Source: Epithemia pelagica
Lineage: Eukaryota > Protista > Bacillariophyta
Reading direction: 5' to 3'
DNA: 64,000 nucleotides
Assembly: GCA_946965045.2 (NCBI GenBank)
Contig: OX337238.1
Location: 186,001 to 250,000 of the forward strand
The position numbers were made by a program, and so were the translations under genes. The notes beneath the pieces are model-generated. The model did not search any database. It saw nothing but the letters and a program-made list of their open reading frames with translations, and was not told where the DNA came from. Of this stretch, positions 13,785-49,752 are shown piece after piece (the first letter of the stretch is position 1; each line of letters starts with the position of its first letter).

Positions 13785-15777
13785 TCACTGCCATGACCGT
13801 TTTCGTGGCCTTTTAGAAGGCCTTGTCACAGCATCATCATCTGCATACCCCATTCGAGAGCGATATTGCCCATTGAGAAACATCATGAACCAGATACCAC
13901 GGTCGCCTGCTCTGTCTTCACGAGCGATTTTCTCTTCCATATCCTCAAAATAGTCCATACCATCCTCATTCATACATCGACTTGAGTTCCAACTGCCTGA
14001 ATATTTGAAGCGAGGATACCTTGCTGAGGATGTATCAATCATTTGATCAACACCATTTTCATTGTACCACCTTGGATTTAATTCAAATAGTTTCGCCTTG
14101 AAAGTGGTCTTGCCCATGTGAGTCCACACATCCCAGCAATCCACAAGGATGGTCAATATGAACGCCTCGTCACTTGAAGTGAATAACTTCAAGGCCTTTT
14201 CGCAATGTTCCTTTCCCTGCTGCTCAGTGTGGTCACCAAAATTGAAATCAATCACGGTTTTATGCATATTCTCACCATAGACACATGGACCAAACAATTG
14301 CAAGAGATATGAATAGGCATAGTTGTCACACTTCTCTCCTCTCAATAACAGAAATTCTTCCAGGGTAGGCATTGGCCCAAAGTCTTCACAGTCGTTCAAA
14401 AGGCATGGATACCTCCGCTGGAAATTACTGTCACGCCATAGATCAAGACCCACATGTTCTAGATTCAGCAACAAATTATCTCACATCTCTTTATGAGAAG
14501 ACGACGTGATGAACCAACACATTCACTCTTCGATTGACACTTACTTATGAATGCTTTTCGCATGGAAGCCAGAACATTTGATCGTTTGCTTCGGAACTTG
14601 TCAAGCATATAAGGTGAATGTTCAATCCACCACTCCTCTTGTTGTTTTGTATCCGTAATACCTTTGCCTTTGAAATAGTGCTCAGTAAAATATGTTTTGC
14701 CATACTTCCCCCAAAGACCATTCGGATCTGCCTTAGTATCTTCGGACATGGAGAAATACTTGACATAACGCCATGCCACCTTCCGAACAAATGTATCAAA
14801 GAACTTCTCCGATACCACCTCAGGCTTTTTCTTCGGCTTTTGCTTCTTACTCTTGTCCTTTTCAACAGACCCTTTGTGTGTAGTGGATGTTACAATCGTA
14901 CTTGTCGGGCAAGATGATTGATTATGGTATACTGTTCTTGTCTGTGTTTCCTGTGCCAACTGATTTTGAATATCGTCTTGTAGAAGAGTTTCCATCGCCT
15001 GATCAGGCCCTGTTGTTAGCAAAGTAGATGACGAAGATGACGACATATCCGAAAGGGAAGAAACGTCGTTAGCAAAGGTATCACCTGATGCATTCAACCC
15101 ACAAACACCCCCGTCATTAGAGCCGTCTCACCGACAAATTGTCCTCCTCCATTTTGTGCATCTAACAACTTACTGACAAGTCCTCCAGCAGGAAAATGTC
15201 TTTCATTAGGATCAAAATCATCTCCATCATACTCACTGGGTCCATTGCTCATATTCTGCAATGCTCGTTGCATTTCAGGTCCAGTGAGAATATTTACACC
15301 GACGTCGTCTTCCTCCATGTTATTAACTGCCGTGTTTGTTGGTTGCGCAAAACCAGATGATGGTTGTGTTCTCAGCCCACCCTGTTCATTATTGCTATCA
15401 TCTGCTGAAGTCACATCGGCTCCATCTCTTTCTGAATTTGTTGCCTGCTCCAAAAGATTACCACTCCCTTCCACAGTTGTGCCTTCTTGTGCTTGTGCTT
15501 GATCGTTGTTCATCGAGATCTGTTCCTCTTCTTCCTCGTCATCAGAACTATCTTCTTGGAGTACTAAACCTCCATTGGCTGCTGCAATAAGAGCATCTTT
15601 GTTTGTAATTGTCCCGTCCTTGTTAGGAAGATTCTCTTTATTTCTTGTTGCCACTGCTGCCAAGATGCTTCTTCGTTGTCGTTCAACCTCTTTCTGATTA
15701 CTTCCATAGTTTGCATTTCGGACTGCTAAGGGTCGACGCCTCGTTGGAGCTGCATTTCTGGTGGTGACTCCTGCCAT
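13785..15777 (-). CDS. Transposon accessory protein of element 1 (three inferred exons)
   Basis: ORFs 15094..15777, 14465..15097 and 13785..14474 join through GT-AG pairs (GTCG|gtgaga...catcag|GTGAT; ATAA|gtaagt...ctag|AACATG). The C-terminal part has LFTSSDEAFILTILVDCWDVW...KYS, a motif I recall from CACTA-associated ORFs. Confidence 0.65.
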
Positions 15778-16341
15778 CGTTTATCTTGGATGCTCCGTCT
15801 GATTTATGACAAGGATATGAACAAGAGCAGGGTGACAACAAGTCCTCTGATGGACAACTATTCAAATTCAAATGCTGGAATGCTCCATGTTTGAATCATA
15901 AACTCCGTGTTTGAACGATGGTCCTTTGGAGAACGTATGAAGATGAGCATAGGTGGTTTCAAGTACATCATACTTGTCAGATGGAACATTGGTGCATGGG
16001 TTTGAATGATTGTCATTTCCTTTCTAATGTCGACAGTGTAGGTATCCTCGGCATTGACACAGTGTTTGAATTCCAATCGCTACTATCACCGTTGGTATCT
16101 AACCCGGCAGGCTGGATTGGATTAAGTAAATACACACGACCGTTTGAAAATATTATGATCCGTTCATGTACATAAGCGATTTTCAGTCGCTTTTATGCAC
16201 CAACGTCGGCCGATCCACCCAATGCGGAGAAATTCTGATATATGCCACAAGATTGACCACCGATGTCTCAATTTGCAGAAATCGATTACAGAGCATTTTT
16301 CATTCCAAACCAAAATCTAAAACCACCAGCATCGTACCATC

Positions 16342-19300
16342 ATGGGCCAGCGTCGTAAAGTAAAAAAGAAGTCGCGAAAGAGATGCTCAAATACAAGCCA
16401 ACAAGAGGAGTCCTTCATATCCTTTCAAGTGTGTCGTTTCTGTCAATCACGTTTCGATGCAAGAGGAATCAGCCGTCACGAAACAGTTTGTGAATTGAAA
16501 ATGAACACACAAAGGAAATGGCCAAATGTTGGCAATGACAACAATGATTGTGCCAGTAATATGAATGCTGATCCAATGAATATTGATATCATGGACGATG
16601 AAACCACTATTCCGCATGCTGACCCACCAAAAGCATACTATGTACCTGGTGATACAGATAATATTATTCTGCGCAACAGCAAGGAGTGCCCGGTTGATTT
16701 TCCTGCGTTCCTTGATAGAGATGGGAAGCAATTGAAACTTCATAAACACGATGCAGCCTTGGTCTCACTTATGATGTTACTTCGGAAAGCTGGTTGCCCC
16801 AAATATTTGTACAATTCGATCCTGGCATGGTCGAGTGACACATACTCAAGATGCGGTCCTGGGTTCTTCCTGGACAACCATTCAAAGAGGAAAACGTTCA
16901 TCGAAAAGTTTTCTACCAAAGGTTTCAATTATCCCAAGGCAAAATTTTTCCCGGTACCAATGGAATTCACCCAAAAACAGGGTGTGGTTGTACCAGAGAG
17001 TGAGAAATCAATAACAACACCAGTATTTGATTTGATCAGTCAACTACAGCGTGTATTACAAGATCCCGATGCAACCAAGAAAGAAAATACGATCCTCGAT
17101 GATGACGATCCGTATCGTCCATATGTTCCAAACAAGCACATCCAAAATATACAAGACGGAGAAGTATTTCGGAAAACAGTGGAAAAATATAGAGATGATC
17201 CAGATGCCTTCGTGGTTGGTCTTGTCTGTTATATGGACAAAACACATGCAACAGGGGATGGAAGATATACATCGGAGCCTGTTGTAATGGTGCCATCTTT
17301 TCTAACGGAAACACAAATGAGGAAAGCAAGGCAACAGATCATCCTTGGGACTATTACAGACATGGAAAGAAAATCATCGGCGGCAAAACATATCCTCGAT
17401 AAAGGGACTCCTTGCCGAAATTATCATGCTCAATTGACTAAGATCCTCGAAGGTCTTGTCAGTATCCAAAAACAGGAAGGTTTATGGATGAAACTACGCC
17501 TCCATGGGATTATCAAAGTTGTCCGTTTGATATTGCCAATGATTGTTGTCAAAGGAGACGGGAAGTCTCAGGATAACCTTGCAGGTCGGTATGCCTCGCA
17601 TCATCCAAGTGTTGGAAGACTATTATGGTGTTGCAACATTAAACCAAGGGATAGCCGATACCCATGGCATGAATGTTCTTATATCAACGCTGCAAGTACA
17701 TACAAAATGTGCTTGAATGCATTGGGTCTTAATGAAAATCGAGAAAAACTGACTGAACAGGATGTTGATTACCAAGAGAGAGACAATGATACATTTTCGA
17801 CTTTGACTGTTCCTACCTGTTTGAGCACATCGCAAGTAAGTCAAGAAAATAGCAGAGATGGAGGGGTCAATACCCTTGTGTCAGCTGCAAAAACCCAATT
17901 GCATGACATGGGACAATATGCAGTCGATCTTTGTTTTTCCAAGGTTTACCTGGGTGAAGGAACCAATTCTGAACATGGGATTTTCTCGGCCAGTAGTTGT
18001 GATGTTCTTCATACATTGAAATCTGGGATAATGAGATACATCATGATTGACTTTTTCACGTTGATGACAAAAACTGAACGGGCCATGTTTGATTATGTCT
18101 ACAATTCAATCTTTCGGGCAAGTAGACAGACTGTATTCTCGTATTCATCGAAACTTGGATATCCCGGAACATCATTCTCGACCGGGATCAGTAACCTGTC
18201 AAAAGTAACTGCCAATGAGTGGGTTGGGATCATGTTTGCTTCAGCAGCTCTATGTGCCACTGCCAGAGGTCGCCTTATATTTGCGAAGAATATGGCAAAG
18301 AAATGGAACAAGGTGGTTGCGGAATGGAAAAAACGACAAGCAAAGCAAACATCCAAAACCACCAACAAGACATGTCAAGTGGACATGGATCAAGTGCAAG
18401 AGACAAGTGAACCTATTGCTGACAATGAAGATGATACTCCACCAGATGAAGAGTACGAACGTACACGTCTTGATGATGATGATAGTGTTGACATTGATAT
18501 CACAGCTGAAACTGTTTTTGATGATGACCCAGTTGCTTACAGGTCTATCTGGGATGTTGATGAGCGGGAACCATACATAGACTTCCTGCATCTATTCGAG
18601 ACTCTTTTGTGTTTCAACAGCTGGATTCGTATGGATACATTCTGGGAAACAGACCCAGACTCACAAGAAGGACAAACAACAGCTTCTAAGTCTCTCGAAT
18701 CAGTGCGGATTTTGATGGATGGCATCAGGAGATATGCACCCAGGCTCGATAAAAAAGGCAAATTGATGTCCAACGGGTGGATGATACCAAAATTCCACAA
18801 TCTCATACACATTATACAACAGATTCAGAATTTTGGACCAGCACGACTGCTTGATGTGGAGTCAGAGGAAAGTAATCACAAGGAAATTGTGAAATTGAAT
18901 GCAAAAACGGTACAGAAACGTGGAAAAGGAATTTTTGAGTCGCAACTTGCAGAAAATATCTGGTGGATGCAAAGCTTGGAAATGCTGCAGGAAGCAACAG
19001 GTCTTGAAGAAGATCATGTCACCTTTCTCCAGGAAGGGAAGTCGCCTTATGAAATAAGGAGAAAAAAGGGATCCCAAAACCAACTCCCTACCACATCAAC
19101 CTCAAATAGTTGTGGAACGGTCATAGTAGTATCCATGACCAGAGAAAAATGTTTGATTCCAGTACCTCACACGAACGTACATACTTCTGGTGATAATCAA
19201 GACCAGTCATCAAATGAAATAGAAAAGGATCTTCCGTCTCCATTGGGTATGTCGATTCAAGTTCCAGGCACGACCAGAAAAGAACAAGATGGATCAAACC

Positions 19301-19785
19301 GAAACCAGACGAGTAGTGTACACAGGCGATTGACAGCAGCACCACACGAGGAGGATGTGGTATCAGTGAATATCGAATTCCATTCCAAAACAAATCATGA
19401 CATGACATTGCCACAGTTTTGTAATCACTTCTTTCGATTACATTACAAACGCTTTTTTCATCATATAGACGGGATGAGTGATGATCCAACAAATGAGACT
19501 TCAACCACACTGGAATTGTTCGGGAGCACAGAACTTAAGTTCGAAGACCCCAGGATAGGAAATATACGGGCTCATCCGAATTATCAAAGCGAGGGGCCAT
19601 GGAGAGATTGGGTGATGGCTAAAGTTCCAAAGAAAAAAAGGAAACCTCTTGACGAGGTATACAACCAACCTCTCGGAGAATTTGATTTAGTTACAATGTC
19701 TGGGCCGTGCGCAACATCAAAGAATGGGCTTCCGAATTCAATGAAAGTGCCCGTGACAATCTCGAGAAACGCTGTAATGAAATGA
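16342..19785 (+). CDS. Plavaka-family (CMC/CACTA-related) transposase, 1147 aa
   Basis: N-terminal CRFC...H...C finger. Motifs VCYMDKTH...EPV, VKGDGKSQD, CDVLHTLKSG, KFHNLIH...FGP...ESEESNHKEIVK and a C-terminal RAHPNY..GPW.DW. The ORF is uninterrupted. Confidence 0.8.
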   Translation: MGQRRKVKKKSRKRCSNTSQQEESFISFQVCRFCQSRFDARGISRHETVCELKMNTQRKWPNVGNDNNDCASNMNADPMNIDIMDDETTIPHADPPKAYYVPGDTDNIILRNSKECPVDFPAFLDRDGKQLKLHKHDAALVSLMMLLRKAGCPKYLYNSILAWSSDTYSRCGPGFFLDNHSKRKTFIEKFSTKGFNYPKAKFFPVPMEFTQKQGVVVPESEKSITTPVFDLISQLQRVLQDPDATKKENTILDDDDPYRPYVPNKHIQNIQDGEVFRKTVEKYRDDPDAFVVGLVCYMDKTHATGDGRYTSEPVVMVPSFLTETQMRKARQQIILGTITDMERKSSAAKHILDKGTPCRNYHAQLTKILEGLVSIQKQEGLWMKLRLHGIIKVVRLILPMIVVKGDGKSQDNLAGRYASHHPSVGRLLWCCNIKPRDSRYPWHECSYINAASTYKMCLNALGLNENREKLTEQDVDYQERDNDTFSTLTVPTCLSTSQVSQENSRDGGVNTLVSAAKTQLHDMGQYAVDLCFSKVYLGEGTNSEHGIFSASSCDVLHTLKSGIMRYIMIDFFTLMTKTERAMFDYVYNSIFRASRQTVFSYSSKLGYPGTSFSTGISNLSKVTANEWVGIMFASAALCATARGRLIFAKNMAKKWNKVVAEWKKRQAKQTSKTTNKTCQVDMDQVQETSEPIADNEDDTPPDEEYERTRLDDDDSVDIDITAETVFDDDPVAYRSIWDVDEREPYIDFLHLFETLLCFNSWIRMDTFWETDPDSQEGQTTASKSLESVRILMDGIRRYAPRLDKKGKLMSNGWMIPKFHNLIHIIQQIQNFGPARLLDVESEESNHKEIVKLNAKTVQKRGKGIFESQLAENIWWMQSLEMLQEATGLEEDHVTFLQEGKSPYEIRRKKGSQNQLPTTSTSNSCGTVIVVSMTREKCLIPVPHTNVHTSGDNQDQSSNEIEKDLPSPLGMSIQVPGTTRKEQDGSNRNQTSSVHRRLTAAPHEEDVVSVNIEFHSKTNHDMTLPQFCNHFFRLHYKRFFHHIDGMSDDPTNETSTTLELFGSTELKFEDPRIGNIRAHPNYQSEGPWRDWVMAKVPKKKRKPLDEVYNQPLGEFDLVTMSGPCATSKNGLPNSMKVPVTISRNAVMK

Positions 19786-20029
19786 AAGAAAGATTGAAAC
19801 AATCTGTCAGCAATTCGACCTCATGATCATAATTTGCCTCTATGGGGGGTTGTCACATACCAGCACTCCCCTCCTAGCCTCCCCCCCCCCCCCCCAACCG
19901 TACGCGAGCCGACCAATTCAACTCAGAGTGTCACACACAAATTGGATGAAATAGTAGATACTTTCCATCGTTTTCCAAAAGTCATCCTCAGTCTTCAGTC
20001 AGTTAAGCTATTCTACTCCTCTTCAAACA

Positions 20030-21157
20030 ATGATCAACCCATACAAATCGAGGAAGAAAACAGTTCCACCCTTGGTGGTCAAACCAAACTTTCCAGTCAC
20101 AAAGATACCTCCATCTAATGAAGAAATGATGATCAACCCATATGAGCTAGAGGAAATAGGGACCCCAATGGTCAAAACGCACTCTCCAACCCCGAAAACT
20201 TGCGACGGTGAACATGACAAGAAGCCACCGCCTGCGTCCAAATCAATAATCAAATGTCATCCACTTCCTTCTTCTAAGCTTGATACCAAGGAAGAAGAGG
20301 AGAAGAAACTACCACCAATCAAGCGCCCATCGTATCAGTTGATCCCAAACCCATATAAGAAGAAGCTCAAGGTTGCCGATCCATCTACTATTCCAATCTT
20401 GCTATTGCGTGACTCTCCTCCGATGTGTAAACCAAGAGCAAACCGAGATAAGCTGCATCTCGAAGTTATTCGGTTCACTGAGCTTGTCAATAAAATCTAT
20501 GGATCCAATGATGTTCCCCCAGAGCCAGTCTGTCCTTGGTGTTTTGTAACCGACAACCTTTCAACAGATCGTAGACTTACAGGAAAATGTTGGCATCGCT
20601 TTGGTAAATCTCTCTCATGTGCCGATTGTTGTTATGGTTGTGGAGTGCCCATGAACGGATGTGATTCAGGTGGGAATGAACGTTGTTGCACCGAAGCCCT
20701 GTATATCCATGATTCGATGAATATCACACGCGAAGAATCAGACATAAACAAGGTTCCATTGGTGTGTAAGTCTTGCTTAAGGCCATGCAATTCTTATTCA
20801 GAATGCGTCTTCTCGCATGGTTGTTGGAACTCTTGCAACAAGTACTTCGTCTGGCGATTCTGTCATATTGCTGGACGGGCGTTGGTGTACGCACAATTGA
20901 AGCCCAATTGCAAAGGACCAGGCACGATTCCCAAACATGCACAGGATATTATCAAAAACGCAACAGAGTTGATGTACAACGAACTGCGAGATCCGATGGA
21001 GTCTTTTCAGTACACATCTCCATTTTGTCATGTTCTTGACCAAGACTCCTGGTCTAAATGGCTTGTCTCCATGTCTTTCGGTCGATACTACAATTACATG
21101 CCGTTCTTCCGTCATTGTTACACAGCCTTGATGTCTTCATCGAAACCATTGTATTAA
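20030..21157 (+). CDS. Cys/His-rich protein of unknown function (paralogue A)
   Basis: 375-aa ORF. The N-terminus is Pro/Lys-rich with INPY repeats. It has CxxC clusters and the motifs NKYFVWRFC, WSKWLVS and NYMPFFRHC. Confidence 0.7.
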   Translation: MINPYKSRKKTVPPLVVKPNFPVTKIPPSNEEMMINPYELEEIGTPMVKTHSPTPKTCDGEHDKKPPPASKSIIKCHPLPSSKLDTKEEEEKKLPPIKRPSYQLIPNPYKKKLKVADPSTIPILLLRDSPPMCKPRANRDKLHLEVIRFTELVNKIYGSNDVPPEPVCPWCFVTDNLSTDRRLTGKCWHRFGKSLSCADCCYGCGVPMNGCDSGGNERCCTEALYIHDSMNITREESDINKVPLVCKSCLRPCNSYSECVFSHGCWNSCNKYFVWRFCHIAGRALVYAQLKPNCKGPGTIPKHAQDIIKNATELMYNELRDPMESFQYTSPFCHVLDQDSWSKWLVSMSFGRYYNYMPFFRHCYTALMSSSKPLY

Positions 21158-21218
21158 ACAAAGACTCGACTTCTTCCAAAGGCAAACTGGGAACAGATAA
21201 CAAGATTTATAATATATG

Positions 21219-22271
21219 TCAATGATCATTACCATCCATATTTCCACGTTCCAACTCCGCCGTCTCAGCCATTCTTTCGAGACAATTACGGAAGCACCTG
21301 ACAAAAAGTGGCATGTAGTTGCGAAAACCAGCCGTAGAATGAGGCAACGAAAGCAACCATACTGCCCATGTTTTATCAGATGCTCGGGCATAATCGTATG
21401 GGGCACAATCGTTATCATCAAAATAGAAACGGGATCGCAATTCCTCAAGCCAAACGCTGCGGACAATAGTAAACATTGGCCAGGTGATTTGACGGGGAAA
21501 GTTCACACCATCGTAAAATGATGTTATTTGAAAAGTACGCGCCACAATATGGCGTATGAGCATACAGAACTGCCACACGAAGTGCTTGTTCTCAGATTCC
21601 ACACAGACACTGCATGAATCCAAATCTGGTTGTGGAATCCCAAAAGGTATTGAGCGTTCGGGAATTCGGAAACATTCCCTACACACCTGACAATGAAATG
21701 TTGGATGCCTGTGGCGGTGACATAAGTTACAACGCATCAAAAAATTCTGCTGCCAGATAACCGAATAATCGAGATATGCCGCACGTGTTACCACTGTATT
21801 ATTTCCATGATTGCACTGGTGATGTGGTGTGGGACGACCAAGGATAACACAGTATGGACAGAGTTTCTCACCTCTAAGCATTTCGTCCACCAACCGTTTG
21901 AATTCAGTCTGGATTTCATGACCGACACGCATCTCTTCTCTGAGTTGTTCTATGACTTGTGGTACATCTTCTTCTTCATTATCGTAATCAAAAAAGATCC
22001 TCCCAGCGTCCCTGTAACAAGGCCGATCATTCACTTCCAAGTTCCTGTCGTTGATCGCCTGCATTTCTCGTCGTCGTCTACGTTCCCGAACATAAAAATC
22101 TTCTTCCTCCGATTCATCTCCCGATTCATCCTCCGGTTGGTCCTCCGGATTGTCAGCCATTCTGTTTGCAGTCTCCTTCTCTTCGTTTTGCTGTGAATGC
22201 AAATACCTGTACTTGTTGCTTCTTCTTTGGATTTTTATGAAACCTCTGCTGTCATATGAACGAGAGTTCAA
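21219..22271 (-). CDS. Cys/His-rich protein of unknown function (paralogue B)
   Basis: 350-aa ORF with an acidic N-terminus, CPYC and the motifs NKHFVWQFC, WAVWLLS and NYMPLFVRC, collinear with paralogue A. Confidence 0.7.
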   Translation of the reverse strand: MNSRSYDSRGFIKIQRRSNKYRYLHSQQNEEKETANRMADNPEDQPEDESGDESEEEDFYVRERRRRREMQAINDRNLEVNDRPCYRDAGRIFFDYDNEEEDVPQVIEQLREEMRVGHEIQTEFKRLVDEMLRGEKLCPYCVILGRPTPHHQCNHGNNTVVTRAAYLDYSVIWQQNFLMRCNLCHRHRHPTFHCQVCRECFRIPERSIPFGIPQPDLDSCSVCVESENKHFVWQFCMLIRHIVARTFQITSFYDGVNFPRQITWPMFTIVRSVWLEELRSRFYFDDNDCAPYDYARASDKTWAVWLLSLPHSTAGFRNYMPLFVRCFRNCLERMAETAELERGNMDGNDH

Positions 22272-22752
22272 CTGGAAATAGATCCACGGATAACCGATCG
22301 GTCGCGTTTGTGTACAGAAATCGTCACACTATACTATTCACTGTGAGTATTACCACATACTGTGAGGATAAGTGTAATCATTCCCAACATGGTCGCGTTT
22401 CACTCGCTGGGCTGACCTATCGGTGTGGCTTTGCAAAATTCCATTGACATGGAACAATGACATGCTTCTAGAACTTGAATGGCTCCAAATTTTCGTAGAG
22501 ACCATTTGGGTATCATTTGCATGGACAGTAAAGGCTCTGAACTTGTCTATCATCAACCAAAAGACTTGCAATAGACCCTACCGGTGTGGTGTTGCCGTCG
22601 TCCCAAAATTCTATGGACATGGAGCAAAGACATGCTTCTAGAACTCGAATGGCTCCAAATTTTCTAGAGACCCTTGGGGTATCATAGGCATTGATTGATG
22701 GTAGGTAGTGGTTTTGCTGACAGGTGGACATGGTCTTGTATATTAGAAATCT

Positions 22753-27978: not shown

Positions 27979-28060
27979 ACCATCACCTGTCTCCTCATTT
28001 CCCTTGTTTATGGAAGCACAACGTCTCTAAGACAAAGAGATCAATCATTTTTGAGATTGT

Positions 28061-30560: not shown

Positions 30561-32439
30561 TAGGTTGATGAAAGAAGCTGGATAGATAATGGGATTGAAC
30601 AGGGGAATCTCGATAGCGTTGGGTGATCGATTGCTGTTGTTGCTGCTGCTGCTGTTGTTGTTTGTTGTGGTGTGTTGGGTGGAGGTGGAGGGAGATGAAT
30701 GAGCATCGATTCTGGTGGTCGTTGATTGTTGAATGACTAGTATGCTAAGTTGTTCGGTTTTGTTCGATGGATCAGAGTGTCGAGTTGGTAATCCCCGCGG
30801 TTAGGGTGATTGGGAAGGAGGATCCATCTGAGACATTCTTTGGGACATCCATGTGCGTCAGTCTTTCTGGCAGCTGCTGTGTGATGTGGTGGGAGTGGAA
30901 ATTCGTGATTCAAAGGTGAGGGGACAGACGCTTGCGCATGAGGGTTGCGTCATGCGCGTCTCGGGGGGGTCGAGCGCGCCAGATAGTTGTAGTGCGCATT
31001 ATCGGAGTGTGGCGCGCGTTATTCGTGGTTTGATCGCGGGCTTGTGCGCATTAAAATTGTTGCATGCGCGTGATAGTCAGCTCGATCTCTAGAACTAGCT
31101 AGAGAAATGTGCATTGTTAGACCTAGATTTGCAGATTTAGTTGGGAAAGCAGGATTATAGTTAAAAACTGCGCATATAAAAATAAACTGCGCATAAAAAA
31201 TTTTAATTCGGCGAATTTTTTCTAGAAATTCGCTTTTGGGGGTGGAAATCAAGCGCCAGGGCCCATTTCCCTCCTTAGATGTAGTGCCATCACCGTGAGT
31301 GTTTGCAGTTTTAACACAGAGGCACGCATCCGATCAACCTGTCCGGTCACTTTTTCCTCTGCACACAATTTGGGGATTTTTATTCAATCATCGAGTAGCA
31401 TGAGTATTGTCAGTGAGGAATCCTTGTTCTTGGAAAACGACCTCCACGGGAGGAGTGGAGGGAAGATTCCAGTGATCCTACCTATCATACAGGCGACGAT
31501 GAATACGAGAAAGGCCAGGAATCGCACAATGAGGTTCAGCAAGTTCGACAAATGACCAAACGTGAAACGAGACGAATTCGCATTTGGCGATTGGTGTTGG
31601 GAACTGTCATTTTAGGAGCAGGGGCGTTGGTCTCATGGTTCACCTATCAGTATCTGGACGATCAACTCAAGGACGAGGCTATTGATAAGGTACGATCGAA
31701 AAGAAGATAATTGTTGCCTAGCTTTGAGAGTGGGATTCGTCTTGCCATGACTTTTACTCGCTATTTTGACAAACTTGAATGACCGCTTGATTCTCAAAAG
31801 TCCTTTTTCTCTCTTTGTCTCTGACATCCTCTTTCTCTCTCTTTTGAATTCTATGTTTAGTTCAATGTCTTTTCTCTCACCATTGCGCAAGTCTCTAAGA
31901 TGCATTTTGGCAACATGTTTGAAGCTTGTCGGTCTTTATCGTTTTCCATTACGGCCCAGGCTTATGCACAAAACTCTACGTTTCCCTTTGTGACCGTAGA
32001 AAATTGGGAAGTCCAAGCTCGTGAGGCTAGGTTACGGGGCAACGTGGAAGTCTTGACTTATAATCCCTTGTTGTCGGATACGCCCACGATCATGGCATTC
32101 AATGCCTATGCAAGACAGAACTCCGATTGGCAACAGGAAAGCATCGAAGAATATAAAAAATTGACTCCGGCCATCCGCAATGTTACATTTCCAGTCAGTA
32201 CCGATGCCTTTGTCTATACACTGGTCGATCCCTCCAAACCCTGGATCAAAATTCCTTCCATGGGCAACCCAGCTGCCCTTCCTGTGTGGATGCAATCACC
32301 ACCACCTCAACGAGTATCGTGGATGATGGCCGACTTGTATTATCTCTTTGGCAGGTATGCCGATACCATGATGTTGGTGGGAGGTACGTTTTTAGTTTTT
32401 TTTACTATAACGGTGTGTTATTAGACTACGGGTTACGCC

Positions 32440-36313: not shown

Positions 36314-39300
36314 AGGGCGTCTTGGCCCTGGTCGTCATGCGGGACCACATGGCCGCACTGCACATAACATACCATTTGTTTAAGCATTGATTACCATATT
36401 CACATCTATACCACTGAATAATATTCTCGCTCACCACCGATCCGCGAAATGGCTTATTCAGAATGTGCTTTTGCCTATTCACATCAACATGTTACTTAAT
36501 CAAACTCTATTCACTACAGTAAAACTTATTCAGAATCGACTTATTAAATCAGTATCTCCTATTCAAATTGTTATTCAACAATATCAATATTATTCAATAG
36601 TATTATTCTGAATTGGACACAAATTGTCGTCAACTTTTATTCAAAAGGGTCATGTTGAACACGGTATTACTCACCGATGAACTGTTGAATAAGACACCCA
36701 ATTCCAAATTTCTAACAAAGTTTTACACTTCGACACAAAACTTGACACGAAGACCATGCTGATCGCCGTCTCTACAAGGATGGTTTTCAAAGCACCACAC
36801 ACGTTTTTCTGTCTACAAACCTGCACACCAAAAGTCTATAAGGTAAACTGACAACCACAATTTATTTCTTAGATGAATCTTTTGTTGATCTACGCGTATG
36901 TCGTGTTCGAGCTACACTAGTCTCTCCACTCTCTGCGACAAGGACCGAATAACATGCTGCACAATACGCGAAATCACATGAGTGGTCATGTTTCTTCGCA
37001 TTGGGACAACACATAACCGGGTTCCTCGAATTCACCTTGATTCCACCATCGATACCAAACATCTTGTTACAACACAATCGCTGGCACTGTTTTGGCCAAT
37101 GTGGATTATGCATATAATATGATGGCGTAAAATACGATGATACGTCTTCTGGCACAAAACCGGATAAAACTGTATGGTCACACTTCGCTTCTCCCTGAAA
37201 TAAGAATCACACCGGTTAGATATTACCCTCCCACAACTGAAATGATTTTTTCTCTTACCTCATTCTCGGAAGATAAATTCTTTTCACCATTACCACTGTT
37301 TTTGCCATTTGCATCTCCATGTCCTTGTTCCTGTGGAACCTCAACACATGGTCAGTTAATCAATTTCTGTAACAACACATGATATACCAGTGTGTTTTCG
37401 TTCCTTACCTCCTCATTACTCTCTTTCTGCTTCTCCGGACTAACAATTATCATGGTTTCAACGACATGATTCTGAATCCTTGGACCTTGTTGGGCAACAG
37501 TTCGTTTGACAACTCTGTTCCCCCCTTCCTTCCTGTTCTTCTTATTTTGTCGTGTATTCTTTGCTGGCGAATCTTCCATACGTGCCCTTTTTGCTACATC
37601 AACACCTGAATCTCTGCTCTCCTGGCTTGTATCATTCCTTGTTGTGTTCTCACATGGTAGAGAAGTACTCCTGCTCCCCCCGGATGTCGTTGTTCCAGTC
37701 ATAATATGTTCTGGTAGAGTAGCACTCCTACTCATACTCTGTTTTGGTAGAGTAGCACTCCTACTCACCCCGTCCATGTTCCTGCTCTTGTCCTTTTGGA
37801 GGTTGGTAACGAACGGCTGACCTTCGTTGCCCCCGTCCTTCCTGTTCTTCTTATTTTGTCGTGTATTCTTTGCTGGCGAATCTTCCAAACGTGCCCGTTT
37901 TGCTATATCAACCCGGGAATCTCTGCTCTCCCGGTTTGTATCATTCCTTGTCGTGTTGTCATATGGTAGAGTAGCACTCCTGCTCCCCCCGGATTGACCC
38001 GTTCGTGATGATGGAGTATCATTGTTACTCATACTTCCATTCTTTCGCACAAACAACACAGAATAGTAATTAGAATTGAACAACCAAATGGAAGAGTAGT
38101 TTTTTCTCTTACCTGTGAATCATCATGGGCATTCGAGTTTATCATACCCAGCACAGACTGATGTGCTATATTTTTTTTCATAGATTGCATGACACCCAAC
38201 GGGACGACTGTCTCACAATCTGTGTTTTGAATGGCCATTTCTACCTCATTTCCAACGGCGTCTTCCATACCTGGAGAAAAGAGTGGTTGACTCATCAAAT
38301 CTGCAACTTCCACGACGGAAGTATCACAATCTGGTCCCTCATTTTCAGCAACTTCATTCCCATGGCATACATTGCTTTCTGTAGTATTAGGTGGGGCCTT
38401 TTTGGCTCTCTTCTTGGTATTCTTATTGATTGAGCATTCACCCTCAATATGGGCGTATAGCTCCGTCAGAAAAGAATCATCCACGTTCACACCCAACTTA
38501 TCGTAAAGAAAGTTTCGTGTTTTTTCCATGCTCTCCTGATTGCAATTAATAAACAACGACCAACATGAGTAGACTTAGAACAGACTTAAAAGGATAATTG
38601 TTTCGGCAAAAACTTACCTGGTTCGGACCTTCATCATTCCTTTGATCGTCCATTGTTTTACGTGTAACCACATAGTACATCTCTCTTGGCTTGAACCAAT
38701 ATTTCACATATTTGTTCTCGTTTGATTGCCCCTCTGTAAGAGAGACACTCCACCCTGCCTTTTTCAACATTGGGATCATTATGCCCCCAACAGTCTGTGA
38801 CTTGGCAGACCTCCCCACAGCAGAAAAGCCACTTCTATCCGTCGGACTGTTTCTTGTTCTCTTGTTGTTTTCGTTAAACTGTGGTTTGGTTTGCTTCAAC
38901 AAATACATCTTGTTCTTATACAGCCACTCATCGATCACAGTAGCCAACCACGAACGATCTCGGTGAAATTTATGAACCAATTCATATACCGCTTGTTTAT
39001 TATCCTCGTTGTAGGGAAGGTGAATCAGATAGTCACGGATATCGGATAACGTAACTGGGTGTGACGACCTTCCAGGCATCAAGATATTCTTCTGGCGTGC
39101 AACTTGACGAAAACCATCTTTGAGTTTGCTTACAACAAAGGTTCGTAAACTGTCTCGCGTTGCCTGAATTTCCAACAACATTGCCCGACCATCAGGCATG
39201 CTCCTGTCGCTCAAACCATCCGTTCGACGATTTTTTCGATACGGCCATAGTCGTTCTGCTTCCTCTTCTGTATTTGGATTACATCCAGTCAGCGGGTGGA

Positions 39301-42300
39301 AATAGTCCTTTGGATATGGGAGAAAATCCGCCGGTACTAAGTACTGATGAGCTGATGGAACATCGTAACTGACCGCACCAGTATTGTTCTCAGAATCACG
39401 TTGCACCGATCCGTTCACTCTCTCGTCGATTCTGGCTGCCACCCGATGCAGTGGATTGCTTTCCGCTGTCACACCAACTTCCATCGTCGTTACAAGATAC
39501 CCTGTTGATACTGATTAAGCACTTTTGCCGTGGTCCACAGTGTGGAAGTACAACCTTTCTACCCAACGGAATGACTTTCTACCAACCAGGCAGACTCCCT
39601 TATCCGTGACCGGCCTTGCTCTAGAAATAAATATTTGAATTTTTACTAAATACGTACTTGAAATATCTATATTGAATATTCCAATGCTCAGTGACTGATC
39701 ATGCGTCCACTTCCCTGCAACCCTCACTCTTTTCTTCATAGTCAAATAAATGAAACCCCGGCATGCGTCTTTTACCCACGCCAGCACACCCATGTCACAT
39801 TCAAATTCAAGCGTCAATCACGAATTGCATCTGGTCCGTGATTCACTGACTAATAAGATCACGACTAGAGTCAAGATCACGATTACCACTGGTCGCTCTT
39901 TCCAGTCGCTAAAAATGAGTGTGGATGGAAACCTTGCGCCATGGACGACAAATCGTATCCATTTTTTCATTGAAGTGGATGTGGAGCACCGAATCATCCC
40001 TGTTTGCCTTTGCGCACCTCAAAGCTAAATTTTGGCATCGATGGACAGAACTTTCCAGTGCCCTAAGTGTTGCCAAAGTACCCCAATTAGCCTCCATCCC
40101 AATGGACCAACCAATTACTGCAACGGTTTGTACCACGGCAGGTGTCAGAATGAATGTTGTTCTAATGCCAAAATTCCATTTTGGGTATGTCTTCCATGTC
40201 TGAACCATCAGGTGGCGCACACTGGTGGAGAGAAGGGCTATATACCTCAATGGAAGGCCCTAAATCGACATGCACAGTCGAAATTTCATCGAAATGCCAT
40301 GCAAAAATGGTTGGATACAACCAATATTCCCGGTTCCCATTGTCCTTCTCATGGCAACAACACTATTTTTCAAGGGGAAGATGAGGAGTACGAAATGGGA
40401 GACACGGAAGAGGCCCAAAATGGTTGTTTCGATCCACTCAACGGAAGAGACTCTGCGCCCAACCAAGATACACCGCTATTGTCATCACTATCGGAAGACA
40501 CCCTGAGATCAATGGGCTTCGCTGATGGCTCAAAATCTCCCTCCTTCATATGGCAAAACATGAGAGCCAATGGTCATGGATTAAAGTACCTAACTTCAAA
40601 AGCCTTTGGACTTCAGCCGGATGAAGTAACTTGGGAAGAGGCACAATTTTCTGTTCTCATGTCGTCGCTGTTGATTGAGCTATCGGGAAACCAACGCCGT
40701 TTGTTGGCCAACATCCTATTACTGGCAGGGAATGCTCCAAACCCTTCCCTGTCAATTTTCAAACAGACAAGATTGCCCACGTCGGTTGAGGATTTTGACA
40801 GATTCTATCTAAAAGGCAAAAACTCTTTCATGCAAAATCTGCCAATTCCAGTCGTTCGGAAAACACCAGATGGTCTGCATTCCTATGTTTCTCTTGTGGA
40901 TTTGGTAGCTAATGAATTTGGGAAAGCCCAGGAGTTCGACGACTTGAAAATTTCCGCTCGGATCGTTTTGGACGACTACGACCGTGTCCCTAACGTGGCG
41001 GCTACACCCCATGGTCGCAAAGTATTACTTGAGTTACAAGAATCGCCATCACAAGATTCACAACAAGATCAATGTGAGTTGCATCTCTGGTTACGGGAGT
41101 GGAGAGATGATTTCGACCCCAATAACACGAAATCCTCCCGTAACCAGGTTTGGGTGAATACATTTACGCTTGGTTCTTGTGATTCTAACCAAAATAGTGG
41201 AGCAACAACTTATTTCATGGGACTTGGAGCTAAGGGCGACGACCATTCATCAGTGGAAAAGGCACTCTTAGATGAAATGCAAAAATTCAATGCGGCTGGT
41301 CATAAACTCTTTCACGGTGGATTGAAGCGAATCGTGCATGTAAAACTCGGTAAACTTGTAACTGGAATCGATCGCCCCGAACGCACGTCCATGTTTGGAG
41401 TAGGAGACCACAATGGAACTTACTCTGTATGCTGGGGTGTGGCAACGAAAGTGGACGAGCTACAGAAAGAAAACAAACTACCCGCTTGTTCCAAATGTCG
41501 ACGGAAACGACTAAATCATCTGGGGATTATGAAACAAGGTCAGGATTCAAACAACAATCAAGGCTGTATATCCGACTGTCAAAACTGGAATTTGTTTGAA
41601 CCAGGCTTCAAATTTGCTACACCGAAGAACTATCCAACAATATATGACAAGTCCTCAGGTGCTCCTAGACCACCAAACCTAAGGCCAATCTTTAGTAAGG
41701 AAGATACTTCTGACAAGCGAAACCACCCTACCCAACATGGAAACACGAGGGTAATCAAGCAGGATGGTAAACGACAACGCAAGGATACATCTGTGGATCC
41801 ACAAAATTATCTTACATCTGTGGAACTAAGTATTCCATGGCTGAAGCAGGCAGTTATCTTCGCCCATCACAACGTCCGAACAACCAATCCGAAGCAAGGA
41901 AGGTCGTCTAGGAGTTATTGGACAAAAGGCAATTTGAGTGCATACCTACGGACTTGTGGTTGTACCAATAAACTGATCGATCAAGTTTACCTGTCGGCCA
42001 AGAATGGAGATCAAGTACCAATATTCCCTGAATCATGGCGTGACTCTTCAGGTATGCAAAGGTGCCATTATGCACCTATGCATATGGTTTTCTTGGGGAC
42101 CATGAAGACTGTCCTAGAGTTAATATTTGCGTGGATGAGTCGTCACGAATCTCTTGCCACAATGGGAAAGCAATTGAACAAGTATCTAACAGACATAAAA
42201 CTGCTTCGATGTTCGCGATTTTTTGCAGCACAACCTCTATCAACATCAAGTTGGGGAACTGGTACTTGGGTCAGTGAGAATTATCTTTTCTCAGCAAGGT

Positions 42301-45300
42301 TCCTTAAGTTTTTGTTAACTTTACCATGTTTCTCCAACCACAGAATGTTACGTCGGGAAGGAATTCAAAAAGAGCTCAAGGTTGTAAGACGATTCATTGA
42401 TTCCTTAACCGTCGCCATTTCATTGCTCATGTTGAACCAGAAGACAATTGCTAACCTGCAACAGGTGGTCGAGGTGTATTTGGATTGTCTATATGACATG
42501 GAGAACATCGAGTATGTCGCAAGTCAAGATGATTCTTCATTAGACGATACGTCCTCGACAAATAAGAAGATGAACAACATCATGAAGAGTAACTCCTTGG
42601 GATTGTTAGCTGTAACGAGGTTTCATAATGAAATGGGACCTGCCACACTTCATTGGGAAGGTGGCTTCGCAGGCGAACGGAAGATCCAGCAAGTGAAACC
42701 AGCATTGTCTATTAAGAGGGCAACTGTTGATTGGACGAAGCTTACGCTAATGCGCATGTACCAACATGATGCGTTGCATTATTTACAAGACCTTGCAGAT
42801 TTGCCTACCAAATCTGGCAGAAACAGGTTGATGGACGGAATAATTAAAGTTTATTCCCGGGAAGATTATGGACCAGACAAACTAGAGATACAGAGAAGAC
42901 CAATTTCTTGTATCATCGGAAAGGATGGGTTGTCTGTTCATATTGTTGTTTGGGATAGGACTACTTTGCAGCTACGAAAGGTCATATTTGATGACCGACA
43001 GGGAACCATGGTTGCCTGTATGTGCTGGGTGGCACCGGTCAAGTTAGCACCAGTGTCGGTGATATATGATTCAATGGATGATCTGTTAAATAGTTCTGAC
43101 TACCGAGAAGCTGGTTTATTACTCCCAATCATGGAAGAAGAATCAAGGGAATATAAGAACCAGTTCTTTTCTATCGGAAGTTCATGGTCACAGCGACTGG
43201 AAACAGGAGATTATAGTATTCCTCAGCTACAGGGACGATTATATGGTGATTGGCTTTAACTAGTTCTCGTTTGTTGGCATTCGTAAGTTATCCGGTAGCA
43301 AGGCCCATGCTTGAACTCTTGTAGAAAGCTTCTGTGTTTTGCAAAGAAATCCCTTTGTCTTTAGAAGGCATAGAACGTTTGTTGTTCGTCGCATATTGAA
43401 ATTTGGTTGGTTAATCACTTCTGTATGGAAGAATTTGGAACTTTTCCAATCATGGATTGAGGCGGCATCGATTAGGAACAGTATCACGGTATAGAGCGCT
43501 TGACGGTCGTCTTCAATATCATCTTGCTTGATGAATGGTGAACACGTCGTCCAATTTAAAATATCTGACATGGTTTTCTTGTTGACGATTTCTTTGTTCC
43601 AAGTGGGCTCGGAATTCGTTCGGATGAAGTCGATTGGAGTATTGTTTAACAAAGGGAGGAGTCTGTTCTTTGTACCCTGTCTAATCCCTTGAAGGCGACG
43701 AGGAACAAATATGACAAGTCCTTCACCCCAATCATCCCCTGATGCGTTGTTGGGTAGGATTTTCTGCAAAACCTTTTGTCGGCGTGAGTTGATTTGTGAT
43801 AGGCGTAGTACTACCTCTTTGAAGTAACGATAGGGCTCTGTGACATCAATAGTCGTAGAGGCACCACGAACGCCCATCAAGGCACGTTGTTCAGAGAGTA
43901 CAGAACGATACGACGAACCACATAGAACCATACCGCATTGAAACCACTTGCCCATTGTTATATAAGCCACGCGACTGGTGAATTGTTTGGGTTTGGTAAT
44001 CGTCAAAAGCATCGATTGACATCGACCTCCAGTCAGAATTTCATCCACAATGATGTAGAAACCGTGGCGTTTGGAAATAGCTGCGATGATAGATAAAGCG
44101 CGGTCACTTAGGACACTGCCATTTGAGGCCAGCATCAGCTCCAAGAATAGTGTTGTAATGGGCTCACAGATGCACGTCTGGTATATACAACGGGCATGTA
44201 GAACACGGAGGCATTCATCTTCGTAAATTGCCAAGGTATCTGGAGAAATAGTACCGGGGATGTGGTATGGGAGGGGAATTGTATGTTGCTTGGAAAACTT
44301 GGAAATATCTTCAGATTCTGGGTGTGCAACAAAGGATGGTCCGTCGTTGATCTGGAACGTCGTTGTGGTCCAAGACTGTAGTGGTCCTTGGTCTCCTGCT
44401 ACGTAGCTGCCACAGGCGACGAGGACCGTAGAGTTGTTTCCTTGACAAAGACTGGTGATAGCATAGAGATTGGCGTCAGAGCCGTTTGGTGTCAACTTCT
44501 CAAACGAAAATCTTCCTTGCGTGACGTCGACGATCGAATGTTTCAGCGCTTCGCCAGTTTGGTAATCATCTTCACTGAAGGCAGTGTTGTACTTCCTCTT
44601 GTACATCGATTGGTCTATTAACACAAACGTCTTGCCCCAGTTATTTGCAAGATCATCCGACATGGTTTTCCATTAAGGGACAGAGATAAGCAGGGAAGGG
44701 TCGTAGCAACTTGGAGATGTGATGTAGTAGGTCAATGGTGGAGGTTGCTCCATTTGACATACGAAAGCATTGGTAGACCACAAGATGTTGTGCTTGTTGG
44801 TGTCTTCGGAGAAGTAATTGGTTCCGAATGTCTTGGCGAGGGTCTCGCGGGGAGATTGTGAGCGTGCCGGGGTAGAAGAATGCGCGCATTTCGGTTTATA
44901 ATAATTAAAGGCACCTTGTCCGGCGTGGCATATGAGGAACTGTTGGTAGCTATTGGTACGTTGGTGGAAATGAGTTTGGAAATTTGAAGTTCTAAAACTA
45001 TATCTACAAAATGAAAGGAATTTAAAATTCCATAGAGTGGGAGATCTACTCTATGAAGGGAGACTGCGAATGACCGTCTACAATATGAAATGAAATAATA
45101 TCTATAATCTGAAATAATAGAAAGTTTCAAATTCCATAGAGTAGGAGATATACTCTATGGAGGGAGACGGCAAAGAAATGATTTGAATATAGAACGCAAG
45201 CCTCTCTATAATTTGAATGTGTGTGTATCTGGTGCGCAATCATCACCCACACGTCTAATACATCGTTTAGCAGCACAACTTCTTGTTTTCCTCTGTGCAC

Positions 45301-49523: not shown

Positions 49524-49752
49524 TTTGCGGGTTTGCTTGCTGGTTTTCCGACGCCTTGGGTTCGGTTTCCGTTCTAACAGGCGTCTTGGTGTACTTCACT
49601 TGATGGTTTTCTCGACAAGGACTTTTTGGTTGCTTCGTTTGTTTACAAACGCTCGGTCTGTTAGCAAGAATTTGTGTCGTGTCGCTTTTGGGTCACTCCT
49701 GATACTCTTTCTGTCGTTCTTTGGTCTCACTTTTGGTTGGGGGATTCTGGAC

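What the first reader, a model, noticed from the sequence alone, without database searches (positions are those of the whole stretch)
13785..44663. Shared chassis with a swappable cargo slot in two unrelated CACTA-type elements
Seen: both elements run multi-exon accessory gene (-), a ~550-570 bp divergent gap (15777/16342; 39484/40041), transposase (+), then convergent cargo (-) and an outer orphan ORF (28061..29227; 45349..46002). The transposases, termini (CACTA vs CACTG) and subterminal motifs (GCGC vs TATTCA) differ. Inference: diatom CMC elements may form a class of cargo-carrying giant transposons in which enzyme genes occupy a defined slot, conceptually like fungal Starships.
Basis: partly seen in the sequence, partly recalled or inferred. 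Interest (0 to 1): 0.8.

Follow-up and report, generated by a model that had tools for sequence, protein, structure and literature searches.

The report
Transposons with built-in enzyme genes
The window holds two real, recently mobile cut-and-paste transposons from unrelated families, and in each the supposed swappable "cargo" enzyme is a fixed gene that has evolved together with its transposase; the idea of such elements is already published for fungi and red algae.

Summary
Both elements are real and I mapped their ends to the base.

- **Element 1:** window 13277-31281, 18.0 kb, at least 10 copies at 97-99.6% identity. It has CATCTAAGG... inverted ends, not CACTA, and a 2-bp target duplication.
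- **Element 2:** window 36356-46430, 10.1 kb, with one 99.7% twin. It has CACTGCACAT ends and a 2-bp duplication.

The listed gene order exists, but element 1 has two extra ORFs before its enzyme gene, and the outer ORFs point in opposite directions.

- **Transposases:** transposase 1 is Plavaka-type. Transposase 2 belongs to an unclassified family with CACTA-like features.
- **Enzyme genes:** the "cargo" is a RING plus TET/JBP-fold dioxygenase in element 1, and a class-III aminotransferase-like protein with its catalytic lysine intact in element 2.

Neither enzyme gene swaps within its family. Each sits beside its transposase at 10-14 diverged loci in this genome, diverges in step with it, and is under purifying selection.

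Exchange appears only at deep divergence. A metagenomic CACTA element pairs a type-2 transposase with an element-1-type TET gene, in a different position and orientation. So modularity is partly supported, while a shared chassis, a defined slot and the Starship analogy are not.

Earlier notes of this scan already described both families on other DNA of this genome.

The parts
13277..31281 (.). Element 1: 18.0-kb Plavaka-type DNA transposon. This copy lacks 372 bp at 19686 and 48 bp at 25034 compared with the ~18.4-kb full-length copies.
   Evidence: Megablast against 10 genomic copies at 97-99.6% identity; similarity stops at these bases.
13277..13291 (+). Left terminal inverted repeat, CATCTAAGGAAGGAA. 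Flanked by a 2-bp target duplication (TA in this copy).
   Evidence: The duplication matches in 6 of 7 copies that have both ends.
31267..31281 (-). Right terminal inverted repeat (reverse complement CATCTAAGGAGGGAA).
13785..15777 (-). Element 1 accessory gene: three abutting ORFs in three frames, probably three exons. No known domain.
   Evidence: The last ORF is conserved upstream of, and divergent from, the transposase at 10 or more diverged loci.
16342..19785 (+). Plavaka-type DDE transposase, 1147 aa here and 1285-1292 aa in intact copies. Predicted catalytic residues are D299, D406 and E843.
20030..21157 (+). Cys-rich ORF of 375 aa, a paralogue of the next ORF. Function unknown.
   Evidence: A homologue occupies the same position in relative L034.
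21219..22271 (-). Cys-rich ORF of 350 aa. Function unknown.
22753..27978 (-). 1741-aa ORF. It contains a second RING-like Cys/His motif near residue 438 (seen by eye only), a C3HC4 RING at residues 565-609, a long low-complexity linker, and a C-terminal TET/JBP-fold dioxygenase with HxD at 1620-1622 and H1682.
28061..29227 (-). Conserved 388-aa ORF of unknown function, inside the element.
   Evidence: present beyond the TET gene at 10 or more diverged loci.
29896..30612 (.). Tandem repeats with periods of 197 and 159 bp near the right end.
36356..46430 (.). Element 2: 10,075-bp DNA transposon with CACTG termini. Its 2-bp target duplication is CG here and TA in the twin copy.
   Evidence: Removing it together with one duplicated copy leaves a 912-aa open frame in the host retroelement.
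36356..36365 (+). Left terminal inverted repeat, CACTGCACAT.
46421..46430 (-). Right terminal inverted repeat.
37352..39484 (-). Element 2 accessory gene: three abutting ORFs, probably three exons. No known domain.
40032..43259 (+). Transposase 2, 1075 aa, of an unclassified DDE-like family. It has an N-terminal C2H2-like zinc finger. Candidate catalytic residues are D359/D360, D447 and E876/E883. CSKC lies at 486 and HYAPMH at 679.
43260..44663 (-). Class-III aminotransferase-like protein of 467 aa, tail to tail with the transposase. GSDAN lies at 61, DEILTGGR at 207, and the candidate PLP-binding lysine is K239.
45283..46002 (+). 239-aa ORF of unknown function, inside the element. Conserved in some relatives only.

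Best explanation
The window holds two independent, recently active cut-and-paste DNA transposons.

**Element 1.** It is a Plavaka-type element of the PlavakaB kind, with CATC... ends and a 2-bp target duplication. Its DDE transposase presumably recognises the inverted ends, possibly helped by the GCGC-rich subterminal repeats. Its fixed companion genes are a spliced accessory gene, two Cys-rich ORFs, a RING plus TET/JBP-fold dioxygenase, and a 388-aa ORF.

**Element 2.** It belongs to a second, unclassified transposase family with CACTA-like hallmarks: CACTG ends, a 2-bp duplication, and TATTCA subterminal repeats. Its fixed companions are a spliced accessory gene and a class-III aminotransferase-like protein.

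**Nature of the enzyme genes.** In both families they are core genes of the element. They are inherited with the transposase and kept under purifying selection. They are not exchangeable cargo.

**Inferred, not shown.** The TET-like enzyme probably oxidises methylated bases to counter methylation-based silencing, as proposed for fungal elements. The aminotransferase-like protein serves the element in some unknown way. Over deep time such enzyme genes have moved between transposase lineages.
For: **Mobility.** Precise ends, inverted repeats and 2-bp duplications are seen in many copies with different flanks. Removing element 2 leaves an uninterrupted host ORF.

**Plavaka identity of transposase 1.**
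- An exhaustive search found 1425 relatives.
- 5 of 8 full-length relatives hit PF18759.
- The termini and duplication length match PlavakaB as described in PMC12730594.

**TET fold.**
- Foldseek's top hits are TET2, NgTET1, CMD1 and CcTet, with E from 2e-8.
- Z is 18.0 to TET2, against about 10-11 for AlkB and FTO.
- The HxD...H residues are nearly invariant.

**Aminotransferase fold.**
- 10 of 10 homologues hit PF00202.
- The family profile hits taurine and GABA aminotransferases at E 1.6e-4.
- K239, D207 and E208 are invariant across 30 sequences.

**Fixed companions.**
- The order accessory(-), transposase(+), TET(-), 388-aa ORF(-) recurs at 10 or more loci. Identities there are 58% for the transposase, 47% for TET, 38% for the accessory ORF and 29% for the 388-aa ORF.
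- The order accessory(-), transposase(+), aminotransferase(-) recurs at 13-14 loci with 38-65% transposase identity.
- Mantel r is 0.78 with p 0.002, and the maximum-likelihood trees are congruent.
- dN/dS is 0.06 for the transposase, 0.09 for the aminotransferase-like gene and 0.05 for the accessory gene.
- The transposase/aminotransferase pair is also present in four foreign contigs.

**Deep exchange.** L036/L037 is an 11,982-bp element with 22-bp CACTAG... inverted ends. It holds a type-2 transposase (family HMM E 1e-43) and an element-1-type TET gene, and has no aminotransferase-like gene.
Against: - Transposase 2 has no statistically supported link to any named superfamily. Pfam gives no hit, hhalign against Plavaka gives E 0.3-0.5, and the AlphaFold model is poor (pLDDT 47), with no Foldseek match.
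- Neither enzyme reaches its Pfam family threshold directly.
- No activity, transcript or splice evidence is available.
- The window copy of element 1 has a truncated transposase C-terminus, so this copy may not be autonomous.
- The co-phylogeny rests on 8 loci.
- In L031 the transposase is far more diverged (22-27% identity) than its aminotransferase-like gene (37-45%). This could reflect either an exchange or a rate change.
- One copy of element 1 (on C16) has unequal flanking dinucleotides.
Confidence: 0.8

Rival explanations
1. Both elements would be versions of one common chassis with a defined slot, downstream of the transposase, into which different enzyme genes are swapped. They would form a Starship-like class of cargo carriers.
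For: - Both elements share a similar (-,+,-) layout, a 2-bp duplication, CA-type ends and subterminal repeats.
- Type-2 transposases carry either an aminotransferase-like or a TET-like gene downstream.
- The TET-like family occurs with two unrelated transposases.
Against: - The elements share no homologous protein.
- No cargo variation is seen among 10 or more and 14 loci.
- Element 1 has two extra ORFs before the enzyme gene. In L036 the TET gene is co-directional and lies 3 kb away, with two ORFs in between.
- The accessory gene changes sides in L028, L032 and L033.
- The gap length is not conserved.
- No tyrosine recombinase is present.
- The orientation match alone has about a 1 in 4 chance.
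Confidence: 0.12
2. The enzyme genes would be host genes picked up passively, as in Pack-type transduplication. They would have no role for the elements and simply ride along.
For: Gene capture by DNA transposons is common. Neither enzyme has a demonstrated role in transposition. Deletion derivatives of element 1 that lack the TET gene still have intact ends.
Against: - The ORFs are intact at most of 10-14 loci across 40-60% protein divergence.
- dN/dS is 0.09 for the aminotransferase-like gene.
- Catalytic residues are invariant.
- The same pairing occurs in other organisms.
- Every genomic hit longer than 150 residues to the aminotransferase-like gene lies next to a type-2 transposase; only three short fragments do not.
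Confidence: 0.05
3. The two families would descend from one ancestral CACTA-related element whose genes have diverged beyond recognition. The similar layout would then be inherited rather than coincidental, and only the enzyme gene would have been replaced.
For: - Protein-language-model features place both transposases nearest to Plavaka clusters, at 0.96-0.97.
- hhalign repeatedly aligns the D1-to-D2 region collinearly, pairing D447 with D406.
- Both elements have 2-bp duplications and CA...TG ends, which are traits of the clade defined in PMC12730594.
- L036 also has a divergent multi-ORF gene upstream of its transposase.
Against: None of the alignments is significant (E 0.3-0.5). The accessory proteins show no similarity. 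The language-model result is only a lead.
Confidence: 0.35

Closest known systems
PlavakaB transposons encoding TET/JBP dioxygenases in Agaricales fungi (Kojima 2025, PMC12730594; association first noted by Iyer et al. 2014, as cited there)
   Same: Element 1 has a Plavaka-family transposase, a 2-bp target duplication and CATC... ends (CATCT here, CATCA in the fungi). It also has a TET/JBP-fold gene inside the element, which is too diverged for Pfam but recognisable by structure.
   Different: The host is a diatom-like alga rather than a fungus. The dioxygenase is fused to RING fingers in a 1741-aa protein. Four further conserved ORFs are present.
Giant Plavaka elements of red algae with the accessory genes PAG1-3 (Bostrychia moritziana preprint, bioRxiv 10.1101/2025.02.11.637652)
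   Same: The size class is 17-19 kb. A set of accessory genes is conserved alongside the transposase, and one of them has a 2OG-oxygenase domain. Tandem repeats lie next to the accessory genes. The accessory genes are reported to move between transposon families.
   Different: The red-algal cassette is a DNA methylase/SET protein plus a ParB-oxygenase protein. No such domains were detected here. Homology between the two accessory sets was not tested.
CACTA/EnSpm, Mirage and Chapaev superfamily
   Same: Element 2 and the L036 element have CACTG or CACTAG ends, short target duplications, subterminal repeats and a second spliced gene. Between the candidate second D and the E they have a CxxC motif and an H(4)H motif.
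   Different: There is no significant sequence or profile match to Transposase_21, Plavaka or any solved structure. The duplication is 2 bp, as in Mirage, rather than the 3 bp usual for CACTA. The aminotransferase-like partner gene appeared in no paper in my searches.
Fungal Starships
   Same: Only the general idea of a mobile element carrying non-transposition genes.
   Different: Starships use a tyrosine-recombinase captain, are tens to hundreds of kb long, and carry cargo that varies between copies. The elements here use DDE-type transposases, are 10-18 kb long, and have invariant gene content.
VANDAL transposons of Arabidopsis with the anti-silencing protein VANC (cited in the Bostrychia preprint)
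   Same: This is the proposed functional analogy: an element-encoded protein that counteracts DNA-methylation silencing of its own family.
   Different: The superfamily is different (Mutator) and the protein is unrelated. The function here is only inferred.

Membership tests
Plavaka (element 1) | Transposase homologous to the Plavaka family (PF18759). | tested here: met
   The direct hmmscan gave no hit. Relatives found at E 1e-50 to 1e-59 by exhaustive phmmer do hit PF18759 in 5 of 8 cases, up to 46.9 bits against a cut-off of 26.3. Membership therefore rests on transitive homology.
Plavaka (element 1) | A 2-3 bp target duplication and CATCA...TGATG termini (PlavakaB, PMC12730594). | tested here: met
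   The duplication is 2 bp in 6 of 7 copies. The termini are CATCT...AGATG, matching 4 of 5 bases.
Plavaka (element 1) | [quoted passage not shown] | tested here: inconclusive
   H819-x3-H823 is invariant just before E843. The conserved cysteines form CxC...C rather than an obvious CxxC.
CACTA-related clade (CMC/CMCT) for element 2 | 5'-CA...TG-3' termini and a 2-5 bp target duplication. | tested here: met
   The termini are CACTGCACAT...ATGTGCAGTG. The duplication is CG here and TA in the twin copy, and removing the element leaves a 912-aa open frame in the host retroelement. The related L036 element has CACTAG... ends.
CACTA-related clade (CMC/CMCT) for element 2 | Significant sequence or structural similarity of the transposase to a known member. 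| tested here: not met
   Pfam gave no hit for six family members. hhalign against the Plavaka alignment gave E 0.31-0.53. The PDB profile search hit only zinc fingers. The model has pLDDT 47 and gave no Foldseek match. Only language-model features point to Plavaka or Transposase_21.
CACTA-related clade (CMC/CMCT) for element 2 | [quoted passage not shown] | tested here: inconclusive
   CSKC at 486 is kept in all members that cover it. HYAPMH at 679 is kept in all but the most distant member. These are short motifs, read by eye.
TET/JBP dioxygenases | A double-stranded beta-helix fold closest to TET/JBP members. | tested here: met
   The model has pLDDT 74. Z is 18.0 to TET2 (293 residues aligned) and 13-14 to CcTet, CMD1 and NgTET1, against 10-11 for AlkB and FTO.
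TET/JBP dioxygenases | An HxD...H iron-binding triad. | tested here: met
   H394, D396 and H456 of the 515-aa fragment are at least 90% conserved. These are residues 1620, 1622 and 1682 of the full ORF.
TET/JBP dioxygenases | A match to the Pfam Tet_JBP model or to a solved TET by sequence. | tested here: not met
   No Pfam hit. The PDB sequence and profile searches returned nothing.
TET/JBP dioxygenases | Oxidation of 5-methylcytosine or thymine in DNA. | not testable with these tools
   This needs a biochemical assay.
Class-III aminotransferases (PF00202) | A sequence match to the family. | tested here: inconclusive
   The window protein scores E 0.036, below the cut-off. Ten of 10 homologues score E 2e-8 to 8e-3, and one is above the cut-off. 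The family profile hits taurine and GABA aminotransferases at E 1.6e-4 to 1.4e-3.
Class-III aminotransferases (PF00202) | The PLP-binding lysine and the DE-x-x-TG aspartate. | tested here: met
   K239, in the motif T-x-G-K-W, and D207/E208/T211 are invariant in 30 sequences. The assignment of K239 rests on the motif; the HMMER alignment is offset by a few residues.
Starship elements | A tyrosine-recombinase captain (DUF3435) at one end. | tested here: not met
   No such domain was found in any ORF of either element.
Starship elements | Cargo that varies between copies of one element family. | tested here: not met
   Copies differ only by internal deletions. The enzyme genes are constant across diverged loci.

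The most novel reading that the evidence does not exclude
A widespread, unclassified family of CACTA-ended transposons in diatom-like protists would need an element-encoded enzyme partner. The class-III PLP enzyme (most lineages) and the TET/JBP dioxygenase (the L036 lineage) would be alternative modules doing the same job on the same transposase backbone. That job might be chemically altering DNA bases or chromatin so that the element escapes silencing. This would make a PLP-dependent enzyme a new kind of transposon anti-silencing or DNA-modification factor.
Probability: 0.2. Interest if true: 0.8.

Novelty: new variant of a known kind. Interest (0 to 1): 0.5.

Why it matters
The result replaces an attractive but wrong picture, a shared chassis with a plug-in cargo slot, with a testable one. 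Two unrelated transposon families each keep their own enzyme gene under selection for as long as the transposase itself has been diverging. This argues that the enzymes work for the element.

TET-carrying Plavaka elements were so far reported from fungi, and oxygenase-carrying ones from red algae. Finding a young, multi-copy family in a diatom-like alga extends that pattern to another major lineage. The organism's identity was not verified here.

I found the obligate pairing of a transposase with an apparently catalytically intact aminotransferase-like protein in no paper. It is the more surprising half of the finding. The one foreign element that pairs the same transposase type with a TET gene suggests the two enzymes may be functional alternatives.

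Tried and rejected
- **Whole-element search.** A DNA search of the genome with all of element 1 returned too many candidates to score, so I used proteins instead.
- **Fetching more copies.** Synteny at most diverged loci therefore rests on hit coordinates, not on sequence I inspected.
- **Word-based search.** The protein search with transposase 1 found only its own cluster.
- **Classifying transposase 2.** Direct Pfam, PDB sequence, PDB profile, three hhalign runs with progressively deeper alignments, AlphaFold plus Foldseek, and an hmmsearch against 150 Plavaka relatives all gave nothing significant. RAG1 appeared only at rank 6 with E 0.38, on a poor model.
- **Accessory proteins.** Pfam found nothing for the accessory proteins, for the Cys-rich ORFs, or for the 388-aa and 239-aa ORFs.
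- **Accessory-gene homology.** Deep homology between the accessory genes of the two elements was not tested by profile. I held only one degraded diverged copy of the element 1 gene.
- **Spliced models.** I neither built nor searched a joined spliced model.
- **Organism.** I did not verify that the organism is a diatom.

Full report
**What is in the window**

The window is G000:C11:186001-250000 of a 60.5-Mb, 23-contig assembly.

I searched the genome with the two long ORFs. There are at least 11 near-full-length copies of the first at 96-99% protein identity. There is one identical twin of the second, plus many diverged relatives of each.

I fetched ten copies of element 1 and three relatives of element 2 and aligned them to the window. 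This fixes the ends as follows.

- **Element 1** is 13277-31281. Its inverted ends are CATCTAAGGARGGAA, and its 2-bp target duplication matches in 6 of 7 copies that have both ends.
- **Element 2** is 36356-46430 and is 99.7% identical to its twin on C16. Its ends are CACTGCACAT, with 2-bp duplications CG and TA.
- Deleting element 2 and one duplicated copy in silico leaves a 912-aa open frame across the junction in the surrounding GC-rich retroelement. This confirms a precise insertion.

**Checking the observation**

Phase-compatible short introns with GTAAGT or GTAAGA donors exist at each ORF junction of both accessory genes. That supports "multi-exon", but without RNA evidence.

- Element 1 does not end in CACTA.
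- Both "outer orphan" ORFs lie inside the elements.
- Element 1 has two additional, mutually paralogous Cys-rich ORFs between the transposase and the enzyme gene.
- The outer ORFs are on opposite strands.
- The ~560-bp gap is not conserved in relatives, where it ranges from about 320 to 920 bp.
- No protein of one element resembles any protein of the other.

**The proteins**

*Transposase 1.* It has no direct Pfam hit. An exhaustive HMMER search found 1425 relatives, and 5 of 8 full-length relatives carry PF18759 Plavaka. Invariant D299, D406 and E843, together with H819-x3-H823, fit a DDE core. Kojima 2025 (PMC12730594) describes PlavakaB elements with 2-3 bp duplications and CATCA...TGATG ends, and states that all TET-carrying Plavaka elements are PlavakaB. 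Element 1 fits this description. The window copy lacks 372 bp at 19686, and its transposase departs from the intact 1285-aa protein after residue 1123.

*The TET-like domain.* I aligned the C-terminal 515 residues of the 1741-aa ORF with 15 homologues. The fold has pLDDT 74. It matches human TET2, NgTET1, CMD1 and CcTet first, with Foldseek E from 2e-8 and Z 18.0 and 13-14. AlkB and FTO score about 10-11. The HxD...H residues are conserved. Pfam finds only a RING finger upstream.

*Transposase 2.* It stays unclassified. Language-model features point to Plavaka or Transposase_21, which is only a lead. hhalign against the Plavaka alignment is collinear over the D1-to-D2 region but not significant. 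The AlphaFold model is too poor to use. The family does have conserved WxDDFDP, DRPE, CxxC, H(4)H and WEGG..GE motifs, and a weak N-terminal zinc-finger match.

*The aminotransferase-like protein.* This 467-aa protein has 160 homologues. Ten of 10 tested hit Aminotran_3. The family profile hits taurine and GABA aminotransferases. The candidate PLP lysine and the DE-x-x-TG motif are invariant.

**Is the cargo swappable?**

Not within the families.

*Element 2.*
- The aminotransferase-like gene lies directly downstream of the transposase, and convergent with it, at 13 further loci with 38-65% transposase identity.
- The accessory gene lies upstream and divergent at 14.
- All matches longer than 150 residues lie beside a transposase; three short fragments do not.

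*Element 1.*
- The order accessory(-), transposase(+), TET(-), 388-aa ORF(-) recurs at ten or more loci. Identities there are about 58, 47, 38 and 29%.
- An intermediate lineage is more similar in all genes at once.
- One locus on C13 has the TET and 388-aa block inverted.
- Among young copies of element 1, the only differences are internal deletions, two of which remove the RING-TET gene.

*Co-divergence and selection in the element 2 family.*
- On eight loci, transposase and aminotransferase-like distances correlate, with Mantel r 0.78 and p 0.002.
- The trees share all supported splits.
- Between two sister lineages, dN/dS is 0.06, 0.09 and 0.05 for the transposase, the aminotransferase-like gene and the accessory gene.

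**Other organisms**

- Four foreign contigs keep the tail-to-tail transposase/aminotransferase pair. In three of them the accessory gene lies on the aminotransferase side. Gene order is therefore not a fixed chassis even within this family.
- The most distant of these, L031, has a far more diverged transposase than aminotransferase-like gene.
- An element-1-type TET gene (P0005, found on 22 contigs) lies inside an 11,982-bp element with 22-bp CACTAG... inverted ends. That element's transposase belongs to the type-2 family (HMM E 1e-43, and no Plavaka match), and it has no aminotransferase-like gene. Here the TET gene is co-directional with the transposase and 3 kb away, with two ORFs between them.
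- Enzyme genes have therefore moved between transposase lineages over deep time, but not into a defined slot.

**Comparison with what is known**

- TET-carrying transposons of eleven lineages, including Plavaka, are described in fungi, together with transfers of the TET gene between lineages (PMC12730594).
- Giant 17-19 kb Plavaka elements are described in red algae. They have three conserved accessory genes, one with a 2OG-oxygenase domain, and these genes are themselves mobile between transposon families (bioRxiv 10.1101/2025.02.11.637652).
- My paper searches found nothing on such elements in diatoms, and nothing on an aminotransferase-type transposon gene. That is absence from one library only.
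- Starship features (a tyrosine recombinase and variable cargo) are absent.

**Earlier notes of this scan**

Notes and follow-up reports on other windows of this genome already describe both families. They report Plavaka with a RING-TET gene, and a CACTG element with an aminotransferase-like gene. I read them after my own tests. They agree with my results but are not independent evidence.

**Limits**

- All functions are inferred.

Noticed in passing
window 31900-36355 and 46431-49900: This is a GC-rich (55-57%) retroelement on the minus strand, with a 1055-aa ORF carrying a reverse transcriptase domain (32440-35607). Element 2 is inserted into its upstream ORF. Removing element 2 joins 35486-36313 and 46357-48255 into one 912-aa open frame.
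   Followed up: partly
L036:142-12123 and L037:427-12397: A metagenomic 11,982-bp element is present in two samples at 99.9% identity with different flanks. It has 22-bp CACTAGAAAATGAGAGCACACG inverted ends. It carries a type-2 transposase, a TET-like gene related to that of element 1, and a divergent multi-ORF gene upstream of the transposase.
   Followed up: partly
L031:10001-15044: An aminotransferase-like gene (38% identity to the window's) lies tail to tail with a 1139-aa transposase. That transposase is only 22-27% identical to the rest of the type-2 family and sits on a very long branch. This is either a rate change or an exchange of the enzyme gene between lineages.
   Followed up: partly
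L028, L032, L033: In relatives of element 2 from other organisms, the accessory gene lies beyond the aminotransferase-like gene instead of upstream of the transposase. In this genome the 239-aa ORF occupies that position.
   Followed up: partly
G000:C3:466296-499999: This is a transposon-rich stretch. An element-2-type locus lies next to an element-1-type locus whose transposase matches occur three times in tandem within a 2730-aa open frame. A homologue of the 239-aa ORF lies just beyond.
   Followed up: no
window 20030-22271: Two convergent Cys-rich ORFs (375 and 350 aa) are paralogues of each other, at 29% identity over 111 residues. They have no known domain. A homologue of the first occupies the same place in the diverged relative L034.
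   Followed up: partly
window 29896-30612 and 45021-45217: Tandem repeats lie near the right end of element 1 (periods 197 and 159 bp), and between the aminotransferase-like gene and the 239-aa ORF of element 2 (period 104 bp). The red-algal Plavaka report also notes repeat arrays next to an accessory gene.
   Followed up: no
G000: At least 15 further TET-like genes in this genome, at 34-38% identity (for example C2:4855233, C7:2231248 and C5:855144), were not linked to either transposase family in my searches. Their contexts are unknown.
   Followed up: no
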